DNA of 63,282 bases, filler included, from Octopus bimaculoides (lineage: Eukaryota), in assembly GCF_001194135.2 (NCBI RefSeq). It is 5 parts of 5 records of this genome, joined end to end, with 100 filler letters (N's around TTAATTAATTAA, not from the genome) between each part and the next. Parts side by side here need not be neighbours in the genome. Positions count along the whole stretch, not along the records: positions 42,144 to 62,078 come from NC_068986.1; 4 more parts are not named here. One strand, 5' to 3'. A program made the position numbers and the translations under genes. Under the pieces are notes generated by a model. That model was not told the origin of the DNA. It saw nothing but the letters and a program-made list of their open reading frames with translations, and made no database searches. Shown here one piece after another: positions 42,144 to 52,366 of this stretch; the stretch's first letter is position 1; each line of letters begins with the position of its first letter.

Positions 42144-42201
42144 GTATTTGTCCCATCTTCGTTGAGCCCTGTGTGGCTAATAAAAGAAATGTATCTATCT
42201 A

Positions 42202-42252
<51 letters not shown>

Positions 42253-42294
42253 GTCTATCTATCTGTCTATCCATTTATCTATCTATCTATCTAT

Positions 42295-42341
<47 letters not shown>

Positions 42342-42600
42342 CCTTCTTTCCTTTCTTCCTTCTTTCCTTTCTCCCCTTCCTTCTTTCTTTGTGTGATTGT
42401 CCCCCACCACTGCATGACAACCGGTGTTGGTGTGTTAATATGCTTGTAACTTAGCAGTTCAGCAAATGAGACTGATAGACTAAATATCCAACTTAACAAG
42501 AAAAAAAAAAGTACTGGGGTCAATCCATTTAACTGGAAAAAAAAAGTTGTTTCATGTGGTGTCTCAGCATGGCTGCAGCGTAATGACTGAAACATTAAAA
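42144..42600 (+). mobile_element. SINE family B 3' part with a (TCTA)n centre
   Basis: 'ccccaccactgcatgacaaccggtgttggtgtg..cagcatggctgcagcgtaatgactgaaac'. Confidence 0.7.
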
Positions 42601-43049
42601 TGTTAAAAAAATAATTGTTAATTATTTTAGAATGATGTAGTAGGGTTGGTGTGAAAAACCAGATCTGGCCTGTTTGAACATAAAACATATAGGATAATTT
42701 GACTGGATATGGCAGGTTTAAATGCTAAAGGGTTAATATACTTAAAAATTTCTTTCCTCCTTCACAATATACATAGTCTTCTTTGCTTTTACTCTTTTCT
42801 TTTATTTCAATATTTTAAACCTTTTTAAGACTTTCTTTCTTTCTTTTTTTTTTTTAAAGATATATTTAAAAATCTCCTTGGGTACATCTTGATCTAATGA
42901 GAACTGTGTTCTATCCCTGTCCTACTATATACATAGCAAATAGATATTTAAGTTTTCATTTAGTACTCTTTTTTTCTCTCCAAATATTTCAGTGTTGTAT
43001 ATAGAAGTATTTTTTTAAAATCATGTCTATAAAACCTGTTCTTTTACAG

Positions 43050-43221
43050 CTTCTGTGCCTTATCAATTGGTTCCCACCTTGTCGTGAATATCAGTGCCAA
43101 TTTATAACGAAAATGCTTAGTGTGTGTGATAAATTTATGCTTAATGCTGAAAGCTTTCTAAATAATGAAGAAACTCATTGTTTGGCTCAAGCCGCTGTTC
43201 CAATTACTAAACTACACCTTG
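43050..43221 (+). CDS. CTBS-like (GH18 di-N-acetylchitobiase family) internal exon A
   Basis: cttttacag|...|gtaagt, 172 nt, phase 0 to 1. LLCLINWFPPCREYQCQFITKMLSVCDKFMLNAESFLNNEETHCLAQAAVPITKLHL(G) aligns with recalled human CTBS VTFDVAWSP..CYNY..ACDFLFVMSYD..ECIAAANAPYNQTLTG. Confidence 0.8.
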
Positions 43222-43479
43222 GTAAGTACGGTACTACAATTAAATTATTTTATTATTTCAAGCTTAATGTTGATGTTTTCTATCTCAAGAAGCTCATTGA
43301 AAAAATTTACATCCTATTTTTGATTTATAATCACTTCATTTTCTCTTTTAAACTTAATGAAGAAGAAATTATATAAGCTTACTTTTCTTTGAAATGAAAT
43401 GTTTTTAACAATATCACTTAGTTGTTATATGAATCATTTGGAAAACTGAAAACTCCATTTCACCATCCTAAGATACTTG

Positions 43480-43722
43480 GATAGTTTTCTAAATTGTATT
43501 TTCTTTGCAGTCACTATGACACATGTTCCTCGTCGATTGTACTCTTTATCATAAAACAGTTGTTTGATTGCAACATGTAGACTGTTTTTGCTTATGGTTG
43601 GGTAGTTTTCTGAATTATATTTTCTTTGGAGTCACTATGACACATGTTCCCTGTTGAATGTACTCTTTATGATAAAAAAAGTTGTTTGATTGCAACATGT
43701 AGACTGTTCTTTGCTCATGATT
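43480..43722. repeat. ~122-bp tandem duplication in the intron
   Basis: 'tagttttct..ttttctttg.agtcactatgacacatgttcc..tgtactctttat..agttgtttgattgcaacatgtagactgtt' occurs twice. Confidence 0.9.
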
Positions 43723-44069
43723 GACAATTGGTACAAACCAATGTTGTAAGATTTGAACTTTTATTGTTATAGTCAGCAGTTACACACAGTAACTTACCAT
43801 GTGGTAACTATGCCTTATGAAAGATCTAAAGAGACATTGTTACTTTCAACCTTGTTTCTTTTATAAACTGTTACTGGTTACCAGTTCAGGTATTTAGTAT
43901 AGTTGAACATTTAACGTAATCACTAGTATTTGTTGTTTGTGTTAGCAAGAGGTGAAAACAGATGTTAGCAAAAGCATGAGAATTCACTCAGACATACATT
44001 GACTAATTTAAGCAGTGTGTAGTAGTTGTTGCTTGCCAAGTATTTTTGATATTATTAATGTAGCCTCAA

Positions 44070-44268
44070 ACATGGTGAGCTAGCAGAATCATTACTGTAC
44101 CAGTTAAATGCTTAGCAATGTTTTGTCTGTCTCTACATGCTGAGTTCAAATTCCACTGAGGTTGACTTTGCTTTAATCCTTTCAAGGACAGGAGTCCTGG
44201 GGTTGATGTAATTGATTTACGCCCACCCCAAAATTGCTGGCCTTGTGCCAAAATTTGAAACCATTATT
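44070..44268 (+). mobile_element. SINE family A
   Basis: 'ggtgagctagcagaatc..gctgagttcaaattccactgaggttgactttg..aaattgctggccttgtgccaaaatttgaaacc'. Confidence 0.78.
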
Positions 44269-45749
44269 AATGTAGCCTCATTTTCTCTCCTCACTTTTAT
44301 AAATTTTTCTCTTTTTTCATTTATTTGTTTTTGGAAATCATTTCACTGTGACTGTCACCTCTGCATAACACATCTGTCTCACTTTTTGTGTATTTTTCCA
44401 AAGTGTAGAAGTTTATGTATCTTGGGGCTGTATTTATGAGTGATGGAAGGCAGGAGACTGAATGGAATGCTAGAATTGCAGGTGTTGGCACAATAACACA
44501 GTGTTACAAAATTTTTATTTTTTTGTCTTTGGTCAGTAAGTGTTATTTTCTATTTGCTTCTATCTAAAAATCAAAGGAAATGACTGTATTCCCTTCAAAC
44601 TTTGGTTTTCTGACCCGAAATTTGAAATTGACCTATTTTTCATTACATTTCTGACAGATTCAGTACCCAATTACTGAAGCAAAAATATCATTATAGCAAA
44701 TTTTCTGCTCAGTACCACAGATTTGTTTGTCAGTTACTTGACCTTAACTAGTTGAGCATTTCTTTGATGGCTGACAATATATGCATCTCCAATCACGAGC
44801 AGGTGTGGAGAGGGGTGCATCGTAGCCATGTGTTGAGAGGGATTCTTTGGGGTTTGAATGAATATTGTAACAAAAGCAAGGTTTGAAGGAAATAGCCATT
44901 TTTCATACATTCTATGGGTAAGCAAATAGGAAATAACAGCTGCTACCCGAGGATAAAAATCATGTTACTCATTGTAATATATGCACTCTCAAAAGAAAAT
45001 TGTTCCTTTTAACTTGGCTCAAGGATAAAGTATAGTCAATTAAATCAATGCCAGTATATTAATAGAATTTATTTTAGCAACTGCAGTCAGATAAAAAGCC
45101 AAGTCAATTCTAGCAGGAATTAATTATTTATGTGAATGGATAAAATTAATAGTAAGTTAAATGCTTTGCAATTTCTACTTTGCAAATTCTCTGACCTGTT
45201 TCTCTGAAAGTATTTTGTTCTGAGTTTAGTAGCTGATCATGTGTGTCATTCCTCTGGGATTGCTGCAATTCATACCAGTTAAATACCAAGTTCAAGTCAA
45301 AATACAGACCTCTCTCTCTTACTAATGCGGAAGTCAGATATCATAATTAAGGATTTTTTTTTTTCTTTCTGTATTCAAAAAATGTTTTTTGTCGTTGATT
45401 TTAAGTGTAGTATTGAACAAAAGAGCTTCTGCATAATCATACAGCATGCTAGAAATGGCAGTCAGATTTCACACAAATCAATATTTACAAACTTTACAAA
45501 TGAAAAGACAAAAATTGTGTTACACTGTGTAAGACACTATCTCCAGCATTCAAGTGTCAGAAGAGAAGAGGTTGGCAAAAAAATTCAAATTTGTTATCTT
45601 CAATTTGGTTTCCATACCTCTTGTTGAGTAATGACCAAAGGAATTGGATTGTGAATACAATTAGCTGAAATGGTGTTCTTCTGAAGGGTCTTTGGAGTAA
45701 CGTTACTCAATGGAATGTGTAGCTTGTTAACTTACTCAATGGAATGATT

Positions 45750-46070
45750 AGGGAGTCTCTCCAGGTTGAGCTGATACTTCCCCACTTTGGGAGGTCACAG
45801 CTCTGGTACTATGGACATGTGATTAGAATGTCACAGGAAAGAATTGAAAGAAGAATCCTTCAAGCCAAGCCAACTGGCAGGAAATCTAGGGGTAGACGAA
45901 CAAGATAGTTGGATAATAGCCATAGTCTCAGTTGGTCATGCTTGGGAATCCAGCCAGAAAATCTAATGATGATTGCTTCTGACAGGACCCTATGGAGGAA
46001 GTACCCGAGGACTCTCTCCCCACGACCATCCCAGGAATAGTGGACAGAGGAGATGGAAGGATACTTGTTC
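45750..46070 (+). mobile_element. RTE LINE 3' fragment
   Basis: RSQLWYYGHVIRMSQERIERRILQAKPTGRKSRGRRTR*LD..LGIQPENLMMIASDRTLWR. Confidence 0.75.
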
Positions 46071-46212
46071 ATGGTCACCTATCATTAGCTAAACATTTTT
46101 AATATTCATTCATTGTTCTTTGTAGTTAGTATAATATCAGTTGTCACACAAGTTATTTCAAGATAATTCTAAGGTAGATATTTAATTATTATTTTTTTTT
46201 TTTTGCTTTCAG

Positions 46213-46319
46213 GTTTTGATGAATATATGGTCAGTGGTGTTTCTCCTCAAAAATTTATTTTGAGTGTACCATGGCATGGCTACATCTATGACTGTGATAT
46301 TTTTAAACCCAAAGGAAAT
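46213..46319 (+). CDS. CTBS-like internal exon B
   Basis: Long polypyrimidine tract tttgctttcag|...|gtaagt, 107 nt, phase 1 to 0. (G)FDEYMVSGVSPQKFILSVPWHGYIYDCDIFKPKGN matches CTBS GYNDYIKMSINPKKLVMGVPWYGYDYTC (GH18 beta-7). Confidence 0.9.
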
Positions 46320-46399
46320 GTAAGTATATTAGTATTTTTCTATCATTTATAATACGTTAAAACATCATTACATGTTATTTATTATATCTGTCACAAGCA

Positions 46400-46570
46400 C
46401 CTACTACACTCTGTAAAGTGGTTGGCGTTAGGAATAACATCGAGCCATAGAAACCAAGCCAAAACAGACTATGGAACCTGGTGCTAACCCTGGCCTTGCC
46501 AGTTCTTGTCTAGCCATCCAACCCATGCCAGTATCGAAAATGGGTGTTAAATGTTGATGCTGATGAGTCA
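46400..46570 (+). mobile_element. SINE/RTE-tail family C (other copies ~51690-51860 +, ~53040-53180 -, ~56290-56548 +)
   Basis: 'gtggttggcgttaggaa..catc.agccatagaaacca.gccaaa..aacccatgccag..tgttaaatg(atg)n' recurs. Confidence 0.75.
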
Positions 46571-46918
46571 ATCTTCTCAGAAATTTATCTCTAGTTGTTC
46601 GATATGTCTACCCTTTAGAACATACGGCATTTATAGTTAAAGGGAGGTAATTCAACATCTGTAATATTTTCCATAAAGGGAAAAAAGTTTAATTTTATAA
46701 ATTCCAATGACTACTATCTTTACTTGATTAAAATAACTATTTTTACAACGATAGTTTCAATACAGATATTTATTTATTCATTTATTTTTATAAATGTTTT
46801 TCATGATAGTTTGAGGCAATAAATTTGACTTATTCCTCATTTTTCCATCTAACATTTGATGTCATTTACAAATTAACTATATTTAAGAATCATAAAAAAT
46901 ACGTTAAAAAAATTATGA

Positions 46919-47211
46919 TTGTGAAATATAACGTATTTTGAATGGCACAACAATGCAAAGTGGACTATAATAACTGTTATAATTTAATTATTCATAGTCT
47001 GATATAATATTTTGGAATATAAAAATTCTTTCTTCAGATATTGCTAGAAATTGATTGATTATAGCAGTGACTCGATTAATTCCTAGCGATATCTGAAGAA
47101 GGAGTTTTTATATTCCGAAATATTATATCAGACTATGAATAATTAAATTATAACAGTTATTATAGTCCACTCTGCATTGTTGTGCCATTCAAGAGACATT
47201 ATATTTCACAA
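46919..47211. repeat. 293-bp foldback: 134-bp arms, 9 mismatches, 25-nt loop
   Basis: 46919-47052 is the reverse complement of 47078-47211, including a 54-bp perfect run (agtggactataataactg...ataatattt). Confidence 0.95.
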
Positions 47212-47328
47212 ATAATACATAATGCTTCAAGCAAACTACAATACTCTAATTAATATGATGATAAATGAAAGTAAAGAAATGAATGAAAAATTTTACGAAT
47301 TAAATCGATATTATTTTTTTTCACTTAG

Positions 47329-47499
47329 GGTTCTCTTTATGACCAATGTTTTATGAGAAAGAAAAATGGGTCACAGACATGTGATTATGAACATTGTCGC
47401 CAAAAAATAAATATGAATAAAATGGCTGAGAATTATATGAAATATGAACGTGACAATACCTGGAATACTGTTTATTTGGCTCCATATTTTAATATTAAG
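47329..47499 (+). CDS. CTBS-like internal exon C
   Basis: ttttttcacttag|...|gtaaaa, 171 nt, phase 0 to 0. GSLYDQCFMRKKNGSQTCDYEHCRQKINMNKMAENYMKYERDNTWNTVYLAPYFNIK; the end matches CTBS WDKDQRAPYYNYK. Exons A+B+C give 450 nt with no stop. Confidence 0.85.
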
Positions 47500-48419
47500 G
47501 TAAAATTCTCTACAGTTACTTTGTTTTTTTTTTTCAAACTAATTAGTTTTTAAGAAGTTGTGTTTTGTATCTATTGACCACCATGGCTTACTATTCACAT
47601 TTCCATACTTCATTAGAGTGACTAGAATTAAAGTAAAATGGTAATTTTTGTCCTTACATTTTCAGCTCAAGTCATTATCACCTATTCCATCTTCTATGAG
47701 TAACATCTTAGACTTTGGACTCATTGAAATTTTTTATGCTTGCATTTTTCACCTCTGTCAATCCTTGGTATTTGCTTTCATAAAAATTCTACAATGATTT
47801 GCAATTATAACATTACATAAGTGTAGACATGGCTTTGTGGTTAAGAAGCTGAACTTCTTAACCACTTGGTTTCAGGGTCATTCCTATTGTGTAGCAGCAT
47901 CCTGGGCAGGCATCTTCCACTATAGCTCCCACACCAGGCTGACTAAAGACTTATGTGTAAATTTGGTGGATGGAAACTGAAAGAAAAACCTATTTAAATA
48001 TGTGTGTGCATGTGTGTGTGTGTCAGATTACCCAACATGTGTCAGCATGGAAAATGCATGTTAAATTATGATGATGACATATGTATATGATATATATGTG
48101 TCCATGCATGTGTGTGTGTTTGTGTGTTTGTTTACATCTGCTGCTTGCTTATTTAAAAGTCATGATATTCTGTTCCTTCCAATACATTGTCCACTCACTT
48201 CATATATTTGAAGCTACATGGAATAAGAAAACCCCTTGCTTGAAAAACAGGCAGGTGTTAGTGATAGGAAGAGTATCCAGCTGTTTTACAGCTGGATACT
48301 CTCAGTAACATATTTTTCTAATCTAGTTGACACAATTCGGCCAGAACATCATTTCAATACCATTGTATAAACCCTCTCTCATTTATCTAATTCAGGTAAA
48401 CACACATCAGAATAGTTGC

Positions 48420-49033
48420 AATGAGGTGAGAGATAGCAACAAGTACAAGTACTTTGGTTAATTTTCAGTGGAAAAGGATGGGTTCACCAGAATTTGGTTC
48501 TCAATCTCCTATTCATCATAGTTGTCCCAGCCATAATAGGAGTTCAATACTGGTTGACCTTGGGAGCTGCTATATAGAGATAATTTCATTATTATGGAAG
48601 ATTTGGTTATAAAATTAGAAAAGAAATTACAGGTGGGGAAGGACCTTAAAGTTAATTTGCAAAGGCCAAAGTTTGAGTAAGCAAGAAAACAGACAGAACT
48701 CTACTGTTTTCAGGAAAATAGCCTGGCTTAATATGTAGAAATGGAGTTGGTAGAAATTCCATATGGTGTACCCAGTGCAAGCTGTAGACACAAGAGGTGT
48801 CTACAGGTTGACATAGAAAGTATGTGGCATATTTGCAGGATCTATAAAGATTAAGAACACGTGGGAAATATTTTCTTGAATGCCCTGGAGTAAACCTAGA
48901 GGTAGTAGATGGTTTTTGTTATGTAGGTAATCTAGCAGTGGAGGGAGATGTTTTGAAAGTATAGTAGCCAGAATAAGATCAGACTGGAGAAAGTTCAGAG
49001 AGCTACCGCCACTACTAATGACAAAAGTTTTAA
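48420..49033 (+). mobile_element. RTE LINE RT/PHD-like remnant
   Basis: VHQNLVLNLLFIIV; G*PWELLYRDN (decayed YADD); ICRNGVGRNSIWCTQCKL; LEVVDGFCYVG..SIVARIRSDWRKFRELPPLL. Confidence 0.8.
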
Positions 49034-49269
49034 ATATGGAGAAAAATCACGATCAACTGGTTAACCAACATGCATGTAAACACCTCTTGTTTTTCATTCC
49101 TGATTCCTGACATTATCTTCCAGTGATAGGAGATAGTCTCCCTTTAAGGGAGGAGTTACTTCCCCTTGACCATGTCCCCTCTTTTTCTTTTAGTACAGGG
49201 TTTTCAACCACAAAAGAAAATTATAATTGTACTGAAGATTCTTTAGGTTCTGATATAAAGACAAGAATC

Positions 49270-50460
49270 TTAACGGATGGCAACCCGTTTTTTTCCATGA
49301 AATCTTTGCAATTTTCTTTCTGCTTATCATTTCTCTCAAAATGGCCATCTTTATGTGAAGTCTTTTGTCTAAAATTTGTTTTGTTGAGTGTACCGCATCC
49401 CTGAGTACAAATTTCTAATATTTTCTTTTATCTGTGACAATTCCAATAAAAATTTTCTGTGAAAAAACATGCTTCTGCCATTTCAACCATTGCCTAAGTT
49501 TCTACAGTTAGAATACTTTTGAAAATTTTTCTAATGCATTTAGATTAAGTAATGGACATATAATTATTGTTGTCACTAGTATCAAAATAATAATATAACC
49601 TCCCAGGTTTTAGATTAGCAAAAAATCAATATATGCCACTATTTATAAACAATCAAGATATCCTAATTTTGGAAACACTATTTCTTTATTTCTGTTAGTT
49701 GTTTCAGTCACTATACTACGGCCATGCTGGGTCACTGCATTGAAGAATTTTAATTGACTCCAGTACTTTTTTTTTTCAGTCTGGTACTTACTCTATTGGT
49801 CTATTTTGTTGTACTGCTAAGTTATGGGGATGTAAACACTGGCTGTCAAATGGTGGTGGGAGACAAAGACACAGATACACACACACAACAAGTTTCTTTC
49901 AGTTTCTGTCTATCAAATCTACTCCCAAGGTTTTGGTCGGCCCAAGGCTATAGTAGAAGGCACTTGCCCAAGGTGCCATGCAGTAGGACTGAACCCCGAA
50001 CCATGTGGTTGTGAAGCAAACTTCTTACCACACAGCAACCCTAAGAATTTTTCCTGTCTTTCTTTATTGTTTTGTTAACTTGCTTAATATACTGTTTTCC
50101 TGTTTTAGAATGTTACTTAACTTACTAACATCACAATTCAAATATGGTCTAGTTTGTGTGGCTACCATCAGTAGCATAATTTTTGTAATCTCAATTGTGG
50201 ATATTGTATCTTCTAAGTTTTTGTTGTTTTCCATTAGAATATATTTAAATTTCTTTGCATATTCATCTTGTCCAAGTTTGATATCCTCACCTTTCTTTTT
50301 TAATATCTTATCCAACATACTGAAACCCTGCTACTTCTTCACTCTCAATTTTAAATAATTTATGGAGCCTGTCAATAACTTGTGTCTGAAAAACTTTTGA
50401 ACACTGAAAAGCAAAAATCATCAACATGAACGAGGAAAATCGTGTAAAAACTTCATAAAC
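49270..50460 (-). mobile_element. Ty1/Copia (GalEa-like) LTR retrotransposon RT-RNase H remnant
   Basis: IFLVHVDDF (50417-50428); FQTQVIDRLHKLFKIESEEVAGFQYVG; LGQDEYAKK; VATQTRPYLNCDVSKLS; RNase H DAVHSTKQILDKRLHIKMAILREMI..ISW. A SINE B is inserted at ~49680-50040. No LTRs were recognised. Confidence 0.75.
49680..50040 (-). mobile_element. SINE family B nested in the Copia
   Basis: 'cacttgcccaaggtgccatgcagtaggactgaacccc..aaacttcttaccacacagc'. Confidence 0.8.
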
Positions 50461-51863
50461 GCAACATCTTTTATTCGAGCAGTTTTAAATAAGTCACAGC
50501 TTTTTCACAGCTGGGATGGCTGAATTACCTTTGTAGTTTTGTTGCAATTTACACTTTATCAAGACTGCTTTTGGTGGTAATTTCTTTAACAAATTATATT
50601 TGATTACACTTACTCCTTTCTGGTAAATGTCATACAAAGGAAATATGGTACTAACCAGGTAAAGTACATTTTAACTGTAGTTTTCTTCTCAACATCATTA
50701 TGCAGTCATTTTCAGTGTTCAGGTACATTTTAGCTCTTTTCGCTGCAGCTCTGTTAAGTAAAAGTGGAAGGCTTGAACACTTGAAAATCATACGATCTAA
50801 TCTTAGTGAGTTTGCTTTTTCATCACCTCCATTTTTTTATTACAATGTGGAACAAAGTAGTGAAGGATGATCTCAAGTGTTATCAACATTTGGACAATCC
50901 TTCTGTGATGCCAGTTATCTTTCCATCTTCCCTCAACTTCATCCTTTTGACAATCATTCTTTATTCTTAACATTGTTTCATATCTGNNNNNNNNNNTGAC
51001 AATCATTCTTTATTCTTAACATTGTTTCATATCTGGCTTTGACCCCCCCCCTTCCTTTGCTACTCATTGTATTCACCTCATTCTATCTCTGACCTCCTAC
51101 ATTCCTGTCACTACATGATTTTCTTTCCTTCTTTCCCAGACTTGTAAACTTTTATCCGTCCACCCCACCCATCATCTCCCTATCTCCCATCCTTACCATA
51201 TCTGCTGCTCTTTTTTCTTTCTGTACTACCACTCTTCACCTCTCCTCCAAACTATTTATATTTTTTATCTTCTCTCTCAACTCATATTTACCATCAACTG
51301 TGCTTCCTCCTTTGTTCACCATTTGCTACATCCACCTCTGCCCCTTCTCAAACCATCTCTCACTCTCCTCCCACAGTCTTGAAAACTTAACCCATTCATC
51401 CTTCCTGATCTCCTGTCGTCACTGTCTCATTTATTGTTGTTATCTTATTTTGTACACTTGAGGGTATGTTTTAACACCTCATCACCACCATCTTCATCTC
51501 TCTTTCTAGTTCCACTCTGATTACTACTATCCATACTTACATAATGTTGAGTAGCTGTAGTATATAATGTTGAGTCCTGTCTTACTTTATAACCCCTCAA
51601 CACCTAACATAAAGCCAAATCCCTTTGTGAAGGGAGCTTTTTGGTCTTGCAGATTATATGGCAACTTCACTAGTGCTTGTGCCACAAGAAAAAAAAATTT
51701 CCCAGTCCACTTTGTAAAGTGGTTGGCATCCAGCTATAGAAACTATGTTACAAAGCAGGCATTGGATCTTGATGCAATCCTTTCATTCATTGAATCCTGT
51801 CAAACCATCAACCCTAAGGGAGATGGATGTTAAATGATGATAATGATGATGATGATGATATAA

Positions 51864-52366
51864 TCTATATAAATAAAAGTGAAATTCTGTCTGTCCGTCT
51901 GGGACCCTTGTATCTCAGTGTACATTTGCTTTACATAGACACATTATACCTTTTTGGAATCAGGATGATCCCGGGATTGAAAATCTGACCTTCATTTGGT
52001 TCTTGAACATCCAGCATTGGGATCTGATGTAGGAGCATTTGGGCTGCTATTTCTAGCAGCTTAGGCAACTGCGAGAGGTTTCAAACGGTTTATAAGAGTT
52101 ACCTCCCTTAGCTGTAATAATAAACGCGACATTCTGTGTTAGAAAACTGATCAAAACATTTTGAATTTAATAGCAAAACTTTGTAACAGTTACCTCCATT
52201 ACCTACTATAATACAATTAACGAAAGTCAAGGACAATCATTCAAAATAGTTAGGCTTCACCTAATGCAGCAGTGCTTTTCCCATGGTCAGCTTTATGTTG
52301 GGTTGTTCCAGAGTTGGAAATGGCAACAATCTCTTTGTACTAACACCAAATGGTAAAACCAAGAAT
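51864..52366 (+). mobile_element. Non-autonomous Helitron: 5' terminus plus PIF1-like helicase C-terminal remnant
   Basis: A|TCTATATAAATAAAAGTGAAATTCTGTCTGTCC start. 52213-52366 encodes TINESQGQSFKIVRLHLMQQCFSHGQLYVG/CSRVGNGNNLFVLTPNGKTKN (helicase motifs V-VI, one frameshift). The 3' end is not established. Confidence 0.8.

What the first reader, a model, noticed from the sequence alone, without database searches (positions are those of the whole stretch)
43050..47499. Divergent chitobiase-like gene lacking the GH18 M-x-Y-D active-site motif: a candidate pseudo-enzyme
Seen: three exons with canonical splice sites join without stops into 150 aa, with intron phases 0/1/0/0, matching vertebrate CTBS exons 4-6 as I recall them. 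The structural landmarks W-x-P, C-D, C-x-A-x-A-x-P, K-x-I-L-x-V-P-W-x-G-Y and W-x5-P-Y-F/Y-N-x-K are kept. However, the beta-6 segment aligns CDKFMLNAES to CDFLFVMSYD (M>N, Y>E, D>S). Established: in GH18 enzymes this Tyr positions the N-acetyl group for substrate-assisted catalysis and the Asp binds substrate. Extra cysteines are also present (PPC, EHC). Inference: this is a maintained but neofunctionalised CTBS paralog, possibly a lectin-like, secreted or structural chitin-associated protein, rather than the housekeeping lysosomal enzyme.
Basis: partly seen in the sequence, partly recalled or inferred. Interest (0 to 1): 0.7.

Follow-up and report, generated by a model that had tools for sequence, protein, structure and literature searches.

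The report
Membrane-anchored dead chitobiase paralog of octopus
The three exons are real, expressed exons 4-6 of an Octopus bimaculoides gene whose protein keeps the fold of the lysosomal enzyme chitobiase but has lost its catalytic residues and gained a membrane anchor, and it belongs to an old, conserved and apparently undescribed family of molluscs and a brachiopod.

Summary
Exons 43050-43221, 46213-46319 and 47329-47499 (+ strand) join into 150 aa. Both junctions are seen in RNA. The peptide is identical to residues 178-327 of RefSeq XP_052824816.1, named "di-N-acetylchitobiase" (Octopus bimaculoides, 458 aa).

In the full protein the GH18 catalytic Glu, encoded outside this piece, is Leu. 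The beta-6 M-x-Y-D is N-A-E-S and the beta-7 Tyr is His.

This is not a cephalopod oddity. At least 23 proteins from cephalopods, gastropods and bivalves, plus a divergent Lingula relative, share one architecture:
- a signal peptide;
- a CTBS-like GH18 domain with no catalytic acid (0 of 23) and its own invariant residues (S212, H256, E339, D366);
- a transmembrane helix;
- a conserved acidic cytosolic tail.

Canonical CTBS copies with D-x-E and M-S-Y-D coexist in Argonauta, Haliotis, Babylonia, Pinctada, Potamilus and Lingula. Intron positions are shared with canonical CTBS, and dN/dS is about 0.19.

The protein is membrane-anchored, not secreted. Its ligand is unknown. I found no paper describing the family. 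My verdict is a new variant of a known kind (GH18 pseudo-enzyme), of moderate interest.

The parts
42144..43049 (+). 3' end of intron 3. The upstream exons 1-3, which include the degenerate D-x-x-D-x-D-x-E block, lie outside the piece.
   Evidence: The RNA contig match starts at 43050, at contig position 600. No tblastn hit to upstream protein parts. The region is microsatellite and low-complexity DNA.
43050..43221 (+). Exon 4 of 9 (172 nt, phase 0 to 1), encoding aa 178-235: LLCLINWFPPC...CDKFMLNAESF...CLAQAAVPITKLHL(G).
43125..43157 (+). Codons for C203-F213 (CDKFMLNAESF). This is the beta-6 segment, where canonical CTBS has C-D-F-L-F-V-M-S-Y-D-E. Here it reads N209, A210, E211, S212; Ser212 is invariant in the family.
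43222..46212 (+). Intron 4 (2991 nt, GT..AG). It contains high-copy interspersed repeats and a fragment that looks like a LINE tail.
46213..46319 (+). Exon 5 (107 nt, phase 1 to 0), encoding aa 235-270: GFDEYMVSGVSPQKFILSVPWHGYIYDCDIFKPKGN.
46269..46283 (+). Codons for P254-W-H256-G-Y258. The beta-7 motif is PWHGY in the family (His in 22 of 23) and PWYGY in canonical CTBS (Tyr in 112 of 115).
46320..47328 (+). Intron 5 (1009 nt, GT..AG). It contains a 140-nt inverted repeat.
47329..47499 (+). Exon 6 (171 nt, phase 0 to 0), encoding aa 271-327: GSLYDQCFMRKKNGSQTCDYEHCRQK...WNTVYLAPYFNIK. In the AlphaFold2 model this stretch is mainly beta strands with one short and one longer helix; by GH18 homology (my inference, not tested) it would be the alpha+beta insertion.
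47500..62078 (+). 5' part of intron 6, at least 14.6 kb. Exons 7-9 (the end of the barrel, then the TM helix and tail) lie beyond the piece.
   Evidence: No tblastn hit to C-terminal parts of P0001/P0002. No spliced contig piece up to 53200. The homologous intron in Argonauta is 12 kb. ORFs here are only low-complexity, and there are no Rfam hits.

Best explanation
What it is. The window holds exons 4-6 of a 9-exon Octopus bimaculoides gene (RefSeq XP_052824816.1, auto-named 'di-N-acetylchitobiase'). It encodes a type I membrane glycoprotein made of:
- a signal peptide;
- an N-terminal C-x-C motif;
- a complete GH18 (beta/alpha)8 domain descended from di-N-acetylchitobiase (CTBS);
- one transmembrane helix (about residues 406-438);
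- a 28-residue cytosolic tail with a basic stretch, then P-F-x-K-D, then Y-x-[DE]3, ending in Leu.

Shown. The GH18 machinery for substrate-assisted hydrolysis is gone. The catalytic Glu is Leu143, the beta-6 M-S-Y-D is N-A-E-S, and the beta-7 Tyr is His256. The pocket face of the barrel carries family-specific invariant polar residues instead (S212, H256, E339, D366). The gene is an ancient paralog of canonical CTBS with shared intron positions. It is under purifying selection and expressed in every RNA run examined.

Inferred. The ectodomain no longer hydrolyses chitobiose. It works as a binding module facing the lumen of the secretory or endo-lysosomal system, or the cell surface. The ligand is probably a glycan or glycoconjugate but is unknown. 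The conserved tail couples the protein to cytosolic sorting or signalling machinery. In short, it would be a membrane receptor or cargo-binding protein built from a dead chitobiase.
For: - Gene structure and expression.
- Identity to XP_052824816.1.
- Homology to CTBS over the whole domain: hhalign probability 100%, E = 3e-51, 339 columns including the C-P-C motif.
- Pfam GH18 above threshold for the full-length relatives.
- AlphaFold2 model: pLDDT 79, pTM 0.73, with an alternating strand/helix pattern and a C-terminal helix at 406-438. All 50 best Foldseek PDB matches are GH18.
- Loss of catalytic and -1 subsite residues, and gain of family invariants.
- Hydrophobic C-terminal segment and tail motif in all full-length members.
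- Family monophyly 200 of 200, with canonical copies of the same species placed elsewhere.
- Shared intron phases with canonical CTBS.
- dN/dS 0.19 over a gap-free 450 nt against Argonauta.
- Exon 6 (window 47329-47499) present in 19 or more RNA runs from several studies, with consistent spliced contigs of about 2.0-2.1 kb.
Against: - No biochemical data exist. Absence of activity is inferred from residues alone.
- The invariant Ser/His/Glu/Asp set on the pocket face could support a different chemistry rather than mere binding.
- The residues that classical chi-lectins keep for sugar binding (beta-6 Tyr-Asp, from my own knowledge of CHI3L1) are replaced here, so glycan binding is not assured.
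- The catalytic-block residues are encoded outside the piece and rest on the RefSeq model. They are corroborated by orthologs from other species and by the RNA contig length.
- Topology and tail function are predictions.
- I could not test whether a canonical CTBS exists in O. bimaculoides itself.
Confidence: 0.62

Rival explanations
1. It is still an enzyme. The re-lined pocket (S212, H256, E339, D366, plus the retained D136 and D141) would form a new active site for a different glycosidic or non-glycosidic reaction, carried out at the membrane.
For: These four residues are invariant in 23 of 23 or 22 of 23 family members and differ from canonical CTBS. In the sequence alignment they fall in or next to the conserved beta-6, beta-7, W-Y-D-D and beta-8 motifs that carry active-site residues in canonical GH18 enzymes; their 3D position was not checked. 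The Asp next to the lost Glu is kept in 18 of 23. Strong purifying selection.
Against: All known GH18 hydrolases and transglycosylases need the D-x-E glutamate, which is established family knowledge; 0 of 23 have any acid there. The Tyr and Asp that position the N-acetyl group are also gone.
Confidence: 0.12
2. It is the ordinary lysosomal di-N-acetylchitobiase of octopus, as the RefSeq name says.
For: It is clearly homologous to CTBS over the whole domain. It has the same intron positions. It is expressed in every RNA run examined. A canonical copy in O. bimaculoides itself was not demonstrated here.
Against: The catalytic Glu is Leu, and the beta-6 and beta-7 active-site residues are replaced. 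There is an extra TM helix and tail encoded by its own exon. A canonical CTBS (P0167: DGINFDFE, IMSYD, PWYGY) exists on another contig in the octopod Argonauta, alongside the ortholog of this gene. The gene falls in a separate clade, 200 of 200.
Confidence: 0.03
3. It is a decaying or functionless gene copy, either a pseudogene or transcriptional noise.
For: The classical active site is lost. The protein branch is long. There is only 88% amino-acid identity between Octopus species.
Against: Open frames and identical exon lengths in Octopus and Argonauta with no indels over 450 nt, and dN/dS 0.19. Twenty-three invariant columns across three molluscan classes. Correct splicing and good depth in all RNA runs examined.
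Confidence: 0.02
4. It is a secreted or shed chitin-matrix or structural protein. The TM segment would serve only as a transient anchor before ectodomain shedding into chitinous structures such as radula, beak or shell.
For: A limpet study reports 'di-N-acetylchitobiase' transcripts enriched in the radula formative zone, though it is unknown which paralog (PMC9263180). GH18 pseudo-enzymes are often secreted, which is established knowledge.
Against: The cytosolic tail is strongly conserved (P-F-x-K-D, Y-x-[DE]3, C-terminal Leu), which argues for a function of the membrane-bound form. Expression is seen in all runs examined rather than in a few. Octopods have no mineralised shell.
Confidence: 0.15

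Closest known systems
Canonical di-N-acetylchitobiase (CTBS, GH18; lysosomal reducing-end exo-hexosaminidase)
   Same: Homologous over the entire domain, including the N-terminal C-P-C motif (hhalign E = 3e-51). The first six intron positions and phases are the same. Most disulfide cysteines and the W-x-P, C-x-A-x-A-x-P, PW-x-GY and Q-x-W motifs are shared.
   Different: No catalytic Glu. The beta-6 M-S-Y-D and the beta-7 Tyr are replaced, and W-Y-D-D becomes W-F-E-D. About 80-90 extra C-terminal residues carry a TM helix and an acidic tail, with two extra exons. It forms a separate clade that coexists with canonical CTBS in the same genomes.
Chi-lectins / chitinase-like proteins (CHI3L1/YKL-40, CHI3L2, Ym1, insect IDGFs)
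   Same: GH18 barrel with the catalytic Glu replaced by a hydrophobic residue (Leu in YKL-40, from my own knowledge). They are maintained as non-enzymatic proteins. Ym1 and CHI3L-type structures are among the Foldseek matches.
   Different: Chi-lectins derive from the chitinase branch, are soluble and secreted, and keep the beta-6 Tyr-Asp and the aromatic cleft that bind chito-oligosaccharides (my own knowledge). This family derives from the CTBS branch, is membrane-anchored, and has replaced those residues.
CHID1 / SI-CLP (stabilin-1-interacting chitinase-like protein)
   Same: A GH18-fold protein of the endo-lysosomal and secretory route without chitinase activity. PDB 3bxw is a structural match (rank 29).
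   Different: CHID1 is soluble and is sorted by binding a receptor (stabilin-1). It shares no specific sequence relationship, TM helix or tail with this family.
Elasmobranch 'di-N-acetylchitobiase-like' paralogs (Scyliorhinus, Heterodontus)
   Same: CTBS-derived copies in which the catalytic Glu is replaced, here by Trp, Met or Gln.
   Different: These are an independent vertebrate event. They are soluble-length proteins (about 370-390 aa) without the TM helix and tail. I did not examine them further.

Membership tests
Glycoside hydrolase family 18 (fold / superfamily) | (beta/alpha)8 barrel of GH18 type with an alpha+beta insertion | tested here: met
   Pfam PF00704 scores 31.8-42.7 bits (cut-off 29.6) for six of the seven scanned relatives of the transmembrane (TM) type, among them the O. 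sinensis ortholog P0001, plus Lingula P0020; Haliotis P0009 is below threshold at 27.8 bits. The O. bimaculoides protein P0063 itself was not scanned. The 150-aa window peptide alone gives no GH18 hit. The AlphaFold2 model has pLDDT 79, and all 50 top Foldseek PDB matches are GH18, with target-normalised TM-score (TMt) up to 0.72.
Glycoside hydrolase family 18 (active enzymes) | D-x-x-D-x-D-x-E motif with the catalytic glutamate on beta-4 | tested here: not met
   Octopus has T-D-I-Y-L-L-D-M-L, with Leu143 at the Glu position. It is 0 of 23 in the family against 108 of 115 in canonical CTBS. These residues are encoded outside the piece and are taken from the RefSeq protein and its orthologs.
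Glycoside hydrolase family 18 (active enzymes) | beta-6 (M/F)-x-Y-D: the Tyr and Asp that orient the substrate N-acetyl group | tested here: not met
   The window encodes N209-A210-E211-S212. No aromatic residue is found at this column in 23 of 23 members. Three alignment methods all fail to restore Y-D.
Canonical di-N-acetylchitobiase (CTBS) orthologs | Orthology: groups with CTBS of other animals, and is the copy retaining D-G-x-N-x-D-x-E and M-S-Y-D | tested here: not met
   It is a separate long-branch clade (200 of 200). Canonical copies of Argonauta, Haliotis, Babylonia, Pinctada, Potamilus and Lingula group elsewhere.
Canonical di-N-acetylchitobiase (CTBS) orthologs | Common descent with CTBS: full-length homology, N-terminal C-P-C, shared introns | tested here: met
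   hhalign probability 100%, E = 3e-51. Exon 4 is 172 nt in both, and phases 0/0/1/0/1/0/0 are shared.
Canonical di-N-acetylchitobiase (CTBS) orthologs | Soluble lysosomal protein of about 360-390 aa without a membrane anchor | tested here: not met
   The protein is 458 aa. Its C-terminal hydrophobic window has a Kyte-Doolittle score above 2, and the model has a helix at 406-438 followed by a basic then acidic tail.
Chi-lectins / chitinase-like proteins | GH18 fold lacking the catalytic acid but binding chitin oligomers or glycans | not testable with these tools
   Loss of the acid is shown. Ligand binding cannot be computed here. The sugar-contacting beta-6 and beta-7 residues are replaced, so binding cannot be assumed.
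Chi-lectins / chitinase-like proteins | Descent from the chitinase (not CTBS) branch; secreted and soluble | tested here: not met
   The best homology is to CTBS, and a TM anchor is present.
Lophotrochozoan membrane-anchored CTBS-like clade (unnamed; defined here) | Signal peptide, C-x-C, acid-less CTBS-like GH18 domain with S212, H256, E339 and D366, TM helix, and a P-F-x-K-D ... Y-x-[DE]3 ... L tail | tested here: met
   The window peptide is identical to aa 178-327 of P0063, which has all these features. S212 and H256 are encoded in the window itself.

The most novel reading that the evidence does not exclude
An ancient, lophotrochozoan-wide type I membrane receptor built from a dead lysosomal chitobiase. 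Its re-lined pocket (invariant Ser212, His256, Glu339, Asp366) would recognise a specific glycan or chitin-derived ligand. Its conserved acidic tail would route it, and its cargo, between the secretory pathway, the cell surface and lysosomes. That would make it a previously unrecognised glycan-sensing or cargo-sorting system in molluscs and brachiopods. A bolder variant is that the new polar constellation is a novel catalytic site.
Probability: 0.3. Interest if true: 0.62.

Novelty: new variant of a known kind. Interest (0 to 1): 0.45.

Why it matters
- GH18 pseudo-enzymes such as YKL-40, Ym1 and the IDGFs are important signalling and immune molecules. All well-known ones are soluble and derive from chitinases.
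- This is a conserved family that instead derives from the N-glycan-degrading chitobiase. It is membrane-anchored with a conserved cytosolic tail, and it has replaced even the sugar-positioning residues.
- Genome annotation pipelines name these genes 'di-N-acetylchitobiase(-like)', so surveys of molluscan GH18 repertoires may count them as enzymes.
- Recognising the family corrects those annotations.
- It also gives a tractable case of enzyme-to-receptor conversion, with canonical and derived paralogs side by side in the same genomes.
- It points to an unknown ligand and trafficking function in lophotrochozoans.

Tried and rejected
- Pfam, PDB and the word-indexed protein search with the 150-aa peptide alone found nothing useful. 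Only the exhaustive phmmer search worked.
- tblastn with human CTBS recalled from memory found only exon 5 at E = 2e-6.
- I searched for exons 7-9 inside the piece by tblastn and by RNA contigs up to 53200. None were found.
- The profile search of the word-indexed database with the family alignment returned only 5 proteins. I therefore could not map the taxonomic breadth beyond named members.
- Supplementary tables of the molluscan GH paper were not held.
- The first NJ bootstrap with Biopython timed out and I redid it with my own code.
- Close-species DNA runs (about 2% divergent) gave only 5 exon differences, 2 synonymous and 3 conservative. That is too few for a rate test.
- Rfam found nothing in the piece.
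- Rejected readings: pseudogene, ordinary lysosomal enzyme and cephalopod-specific novelty (see the rival explanations).

Full report

Yes. Reading the piece and joining 43050-43221, 46213-46319 and 47329-47499 gives a 450-nt open frame of 150 codons. The other two frames are full of stops, and all boundaries are AG|exon|GT.

Public RNA runs of the same species show exactly these junctions. These are three contig sets and one raw-read run. The reads skip 2991 nt and 1009 nt with GT..AG ends, supported by 28 and 49 raw split reads in X24 and by single contigs of 2110 nt and 2031 nt that carry all three exons contiguously. Exon 6 (window 47329-47499) is present with all sampled words in 19 RNA-type runs from several studies. 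The gene is therefore transcribed and correctly spliced.

The exhaustive phmmer search gives E = 8e-90 to an Octopus sinensis protein and 1e-16 to 4e-28 to a series of proteins of about 450 aa.

**2. Identity of the gene**

A cluster look-up shows that the O. sinensis hit shares a 90% cluster with XP_052824816.1, 'di-N-acetylchitobiase [Octopus bimaculoides]', 458 aa. The window peptide is an exact substring of it, residues 178-327. The window is therefore O. bimaculoides.

The piece contains only these three exons:
- No upstream or downstream coding parts are found by tblastn.
- No further spliced contig pieces are found up to 53200.
- The rest of the piece shows only low-complexity ORFs and no Rfam hits.

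In the Argonauta hians ortholog (P0080, 66% identity) the gene has 9 coding exons of 144/151/215/172/107/171/91/150/155 nt. Exons 4-6 have the same lengths and phases as the window's exons. A 12-kb intron follows exon 6, which explains why exon 7 is beyond the piece. The last exon encodes just the transmembrane helix and tail.

**3. Relationship to chitobiase**

The 62 phmmer hits fall into two classes.
- Class A has about 450 aa, an N-terminal hydrophobic signal, a strongly hydrophobic segment about 40 residues from the C-terminus, and an acidic tail ending in Leu. It has no D-x-E and no M-x-Y-D.
- Class B has about 365 aa with (I/F)-D-(I/F)-E and M-(S/A)-Y-D. These are ordinary CTBS of vertebrates, hemichordates, sponges and protists.

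A profile-profile comparison of the two classes gives probability 100%, E = 3e-51 over 339 columns, starting at the N-terminal C-P-C motif. Class A is therefore CTBS-derived over its whole luminal domain.

The Argonauta canonical CTBS gene has exons 123/145/212/172/98/168/192 with phases 0/0/1/0/1/0/0. The first six intron positions are shared with the class A gene. The two are genomic paralogs, not retrocopies.

**4. Active-site audit**

I aligned 139 sequences: 23 class A, the Lingula relative and 115 canonical.

| Position | Canonical CTBS | Class A | Octopus |
|---|---|---|---|
| Catalytic Glu (beta-4) | E in 108 of 115 | L13, M4, V3, T2, I1; no acid | L143 |
| Asp two residues before the catalytic Glu | D in 110 of 115 | D in 18 of 23 | D141 |
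| beta-6 M-S-Y-D | M112, S79, Y112, D110 | (N/S)-(P/A)-(D/E)-S, with Ser in 23 of 23 | N209-A210-E211-S212 |
| beta-7 PWYGY | Y in 112 of 115 | H in 22 of 23 | H256 |
| W-Y-D-D | D in 115 of 115 | E in 23 of 23 | E339 |
| Residue four after the beta-8 Trp | variable (L, A, C, F, I) | D in 23 of 23 | D366 |
| C180 | 0 of 115 | 23 of 23 | C180 |
| H388 (in the C-terminal extension) | no counterpart | 23 of 23 | H388 |

A 24-sequence MAFFT alignment and hhalign shift it by one to three residues, but none puts a Tyr-Asp back.

Established GH18 knowledge is that the D-x-E glutamate is the general acid, and that the beta-6 Tyr and Asp and the beta-7 Tyr hold the -1 GlcNAc and its N-acetyl group for substrate-assisted catalysis. 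On that basis GH18-type hydrolysis is very unlikely. The pattern is not random decay but replacement by a new invariant polar set, which argues for a retained, altered pocket function.

The catalytic-block residues lie in exon 3, outside the piece. They are taken from the RefSeq model. The RNA contig has 599 nt upstream of exon 4, enough for 177 codons plus a 5' UTR.

**5. Fold and topology**

- Pfam GH18 is matched just above threshold, mostly over the C-terminal half. PDB sequence searches likewise see only the C-terminal part. There is no solved CTBS structure.
- An AlphaFold2 model of the octopus protein with the 18-sequence family alignment has mean pLDDT 79 and pTM 0.73. It shows an alternating strand/helix pattern, an N-terminal signal helix, and a long helix at 406-438 followed by a disordered tail.
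- The 50 best Foldseek PDB matches are all GH18 proteins. They include SleL, bacterial, fungal and insect chitinases, Ym1, SPC-40 and SI-CLP.
- Five N-x-S/T sequons lie in the ectodomain.
- The basic cluster directly after the helix (RRTHKRNRR) fits a cytosolic tail, by the positive-inside rule (inference).
- The tail motif is conserved across the family: basic stretch, P-F-x-(K/R)-D, acidic run, (Y/F)-x-[DE]3, then C-terminal Leu. It resembles Tyr/di-acidic export signals and acidic-cluster sorting signals. That resemblance is from memory and is a lead only.

**6. Age, distribution and selection**

Named class A members come from:
- Octopus bimaculoides, O. sinensis, O. vulgaris and Argonauta (cephalopods);
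- Haliotis rubra, H. asinina and Babylonia (gastropods);
- Pinctada, Potamilus and Sinanodonta (bivalves).

Lingula anatina has a more divergent TM-bearing relative with D in place of the Glu. Canonical CTBS copies exist in Argonauta, Haliotis rubra, Babylonia, Pinctada, Potamilus and Lingula as well.

In an NJ tree of 359 columns with 200 bootstraps, class A is monophyletic (200 of 200), and so is class A plus the Lingula protein (200 of 200). It sits on a long branch. Its attachment point among canonical sequences is not reliable because of long-branch effects. The duplication therefore predates the split of the three molluscan classes sampled and probably the mollusc-brachiopod split.

Between Octopus and Argonauta the 450 nt align without indels. 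This gives dN = 0.20, dS = 1.06 and dN/dS = 0.19. dS is near saturation, so the ratio is approximate. Closely related species differ at 5 exon sites, 2 synonymous and 3 conservative, against about 2% in introns. That is too few for a test.

**7. Literature**

Searches for di-N-acetylchitobiase in molluscs, CTBS/GH18 pseudoenzymes, and inactive or transmembrane chitobiase found no description of this family.

A survey of molluscan GH families treats 'group A' GH18 as di-N-acetylchitobiase with an L-D-G-x-N-x-D-x-E centre and wide expression (PMC7560691). That is the canonical paralog. Other papers use 'DIAC' as a marker without distinguishing paralogs (PMC9263180, PMC10396302).

**8. Verdict**

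The finding is real and the pseudo-enzyme interpretation is supported and extended. The gene encodes a membrane-anchored, catalytically disabled CTBS-derived GH18 protein of an old lophotrochozoan family that databases mislabel as the enzyme.

How it works is inferred, not shown. The most likely reading is a luminal or extracellular binding module coupled to a sorting or signalling tail. The alternatives are a new catalytic site, or shedding into chitinous matrices.

It is a new variant of a known kind (GH18 pseudo-enzymes). It is of moderate interest to specialists and does not resolve a long-standing question by itself.

Noticed in passing
window 46919-47058 and 47072-47211 (intron 5): A 140-nt inverted repeat, 92% complementary, with a 13-nt spacer. 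It is a long hairpin-forming, MITE-like palindromic element. Some RNA contigs join 47005 to 47160 with unrelated inserted letters.
   Followed up: partly
window 44027-44348 (also 44510-44992 and 46281-46602): Very high-copy interspersed repeats. Contig word depth is 10^4-10^6 in RNA and DNA runs of this and related species. Thousands of reads break at 44171, 44231 and 44269 and continue into (TTA)n-like tails, so this looks SINE-like. No tRNA or Rfam match at gathering threshold.
   Followed up: partly
window 45740-46040 (+ strand, intron 4): The translation resembles the C-terminal tail of a LINE/RTE ORF2 (...GHVIRM...GRKSRGRRTR.LD...DRTLWR...), interrupted by stops. It is probably a dead retrotransposon fragment. 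This rests on visual reading only.
   Followed up: no
window 42190-42340; 57640-58000; 59370-60050: A (CTAT)n/(CTGT)n microsatellite lies at the start of the piece. Downstream there are CT-rich and (TA/CA)-rich low-complexity tracts, and a run of N (assembly gap) near 59.6-59.9 kb.
   Followed up: no
proteins P0195, P0203, P0207, P0211, P0214, P0219, P0220 (Scyliorhinus, Heterodontus); also P0032, P0036, P0053, P0056: Shark and ray 'di-N-acetylchitobiase-like' paralogs carry Trp, Met or Gln at the catalytic Glu column. Several copies lie on one Heterodontus contig. This looks like an independent expansion of CTBS-derived pseudo-enzymes in elasmobranchs.
   Followed up: partly
proteins P0017 and P0164 (Babylonia areolata): The TM-type and the canonical CTBS of Babylonia are reported on contigs of the same length (45,605,898 bp), so they are probably on the same chromosome. 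In Argonauta they are on different contigs.
   Followed up: no
The cause is unknown; it is possibly simple-sequence content shared with human reads. RNA evidence for this part of intron 6 is therefore missing.
   Followed up: no
proteins P0103, P0104, P0105 (Elysia chlorotica, Plakobranchus ocellatus): Sacoglossan sea slugs have 700-790-aa proteins that score as the best matches to the canonical CTBS profile (bits 604-685). This suggests tandem double-CTBS domains or fused gene models.
   Followed up: no
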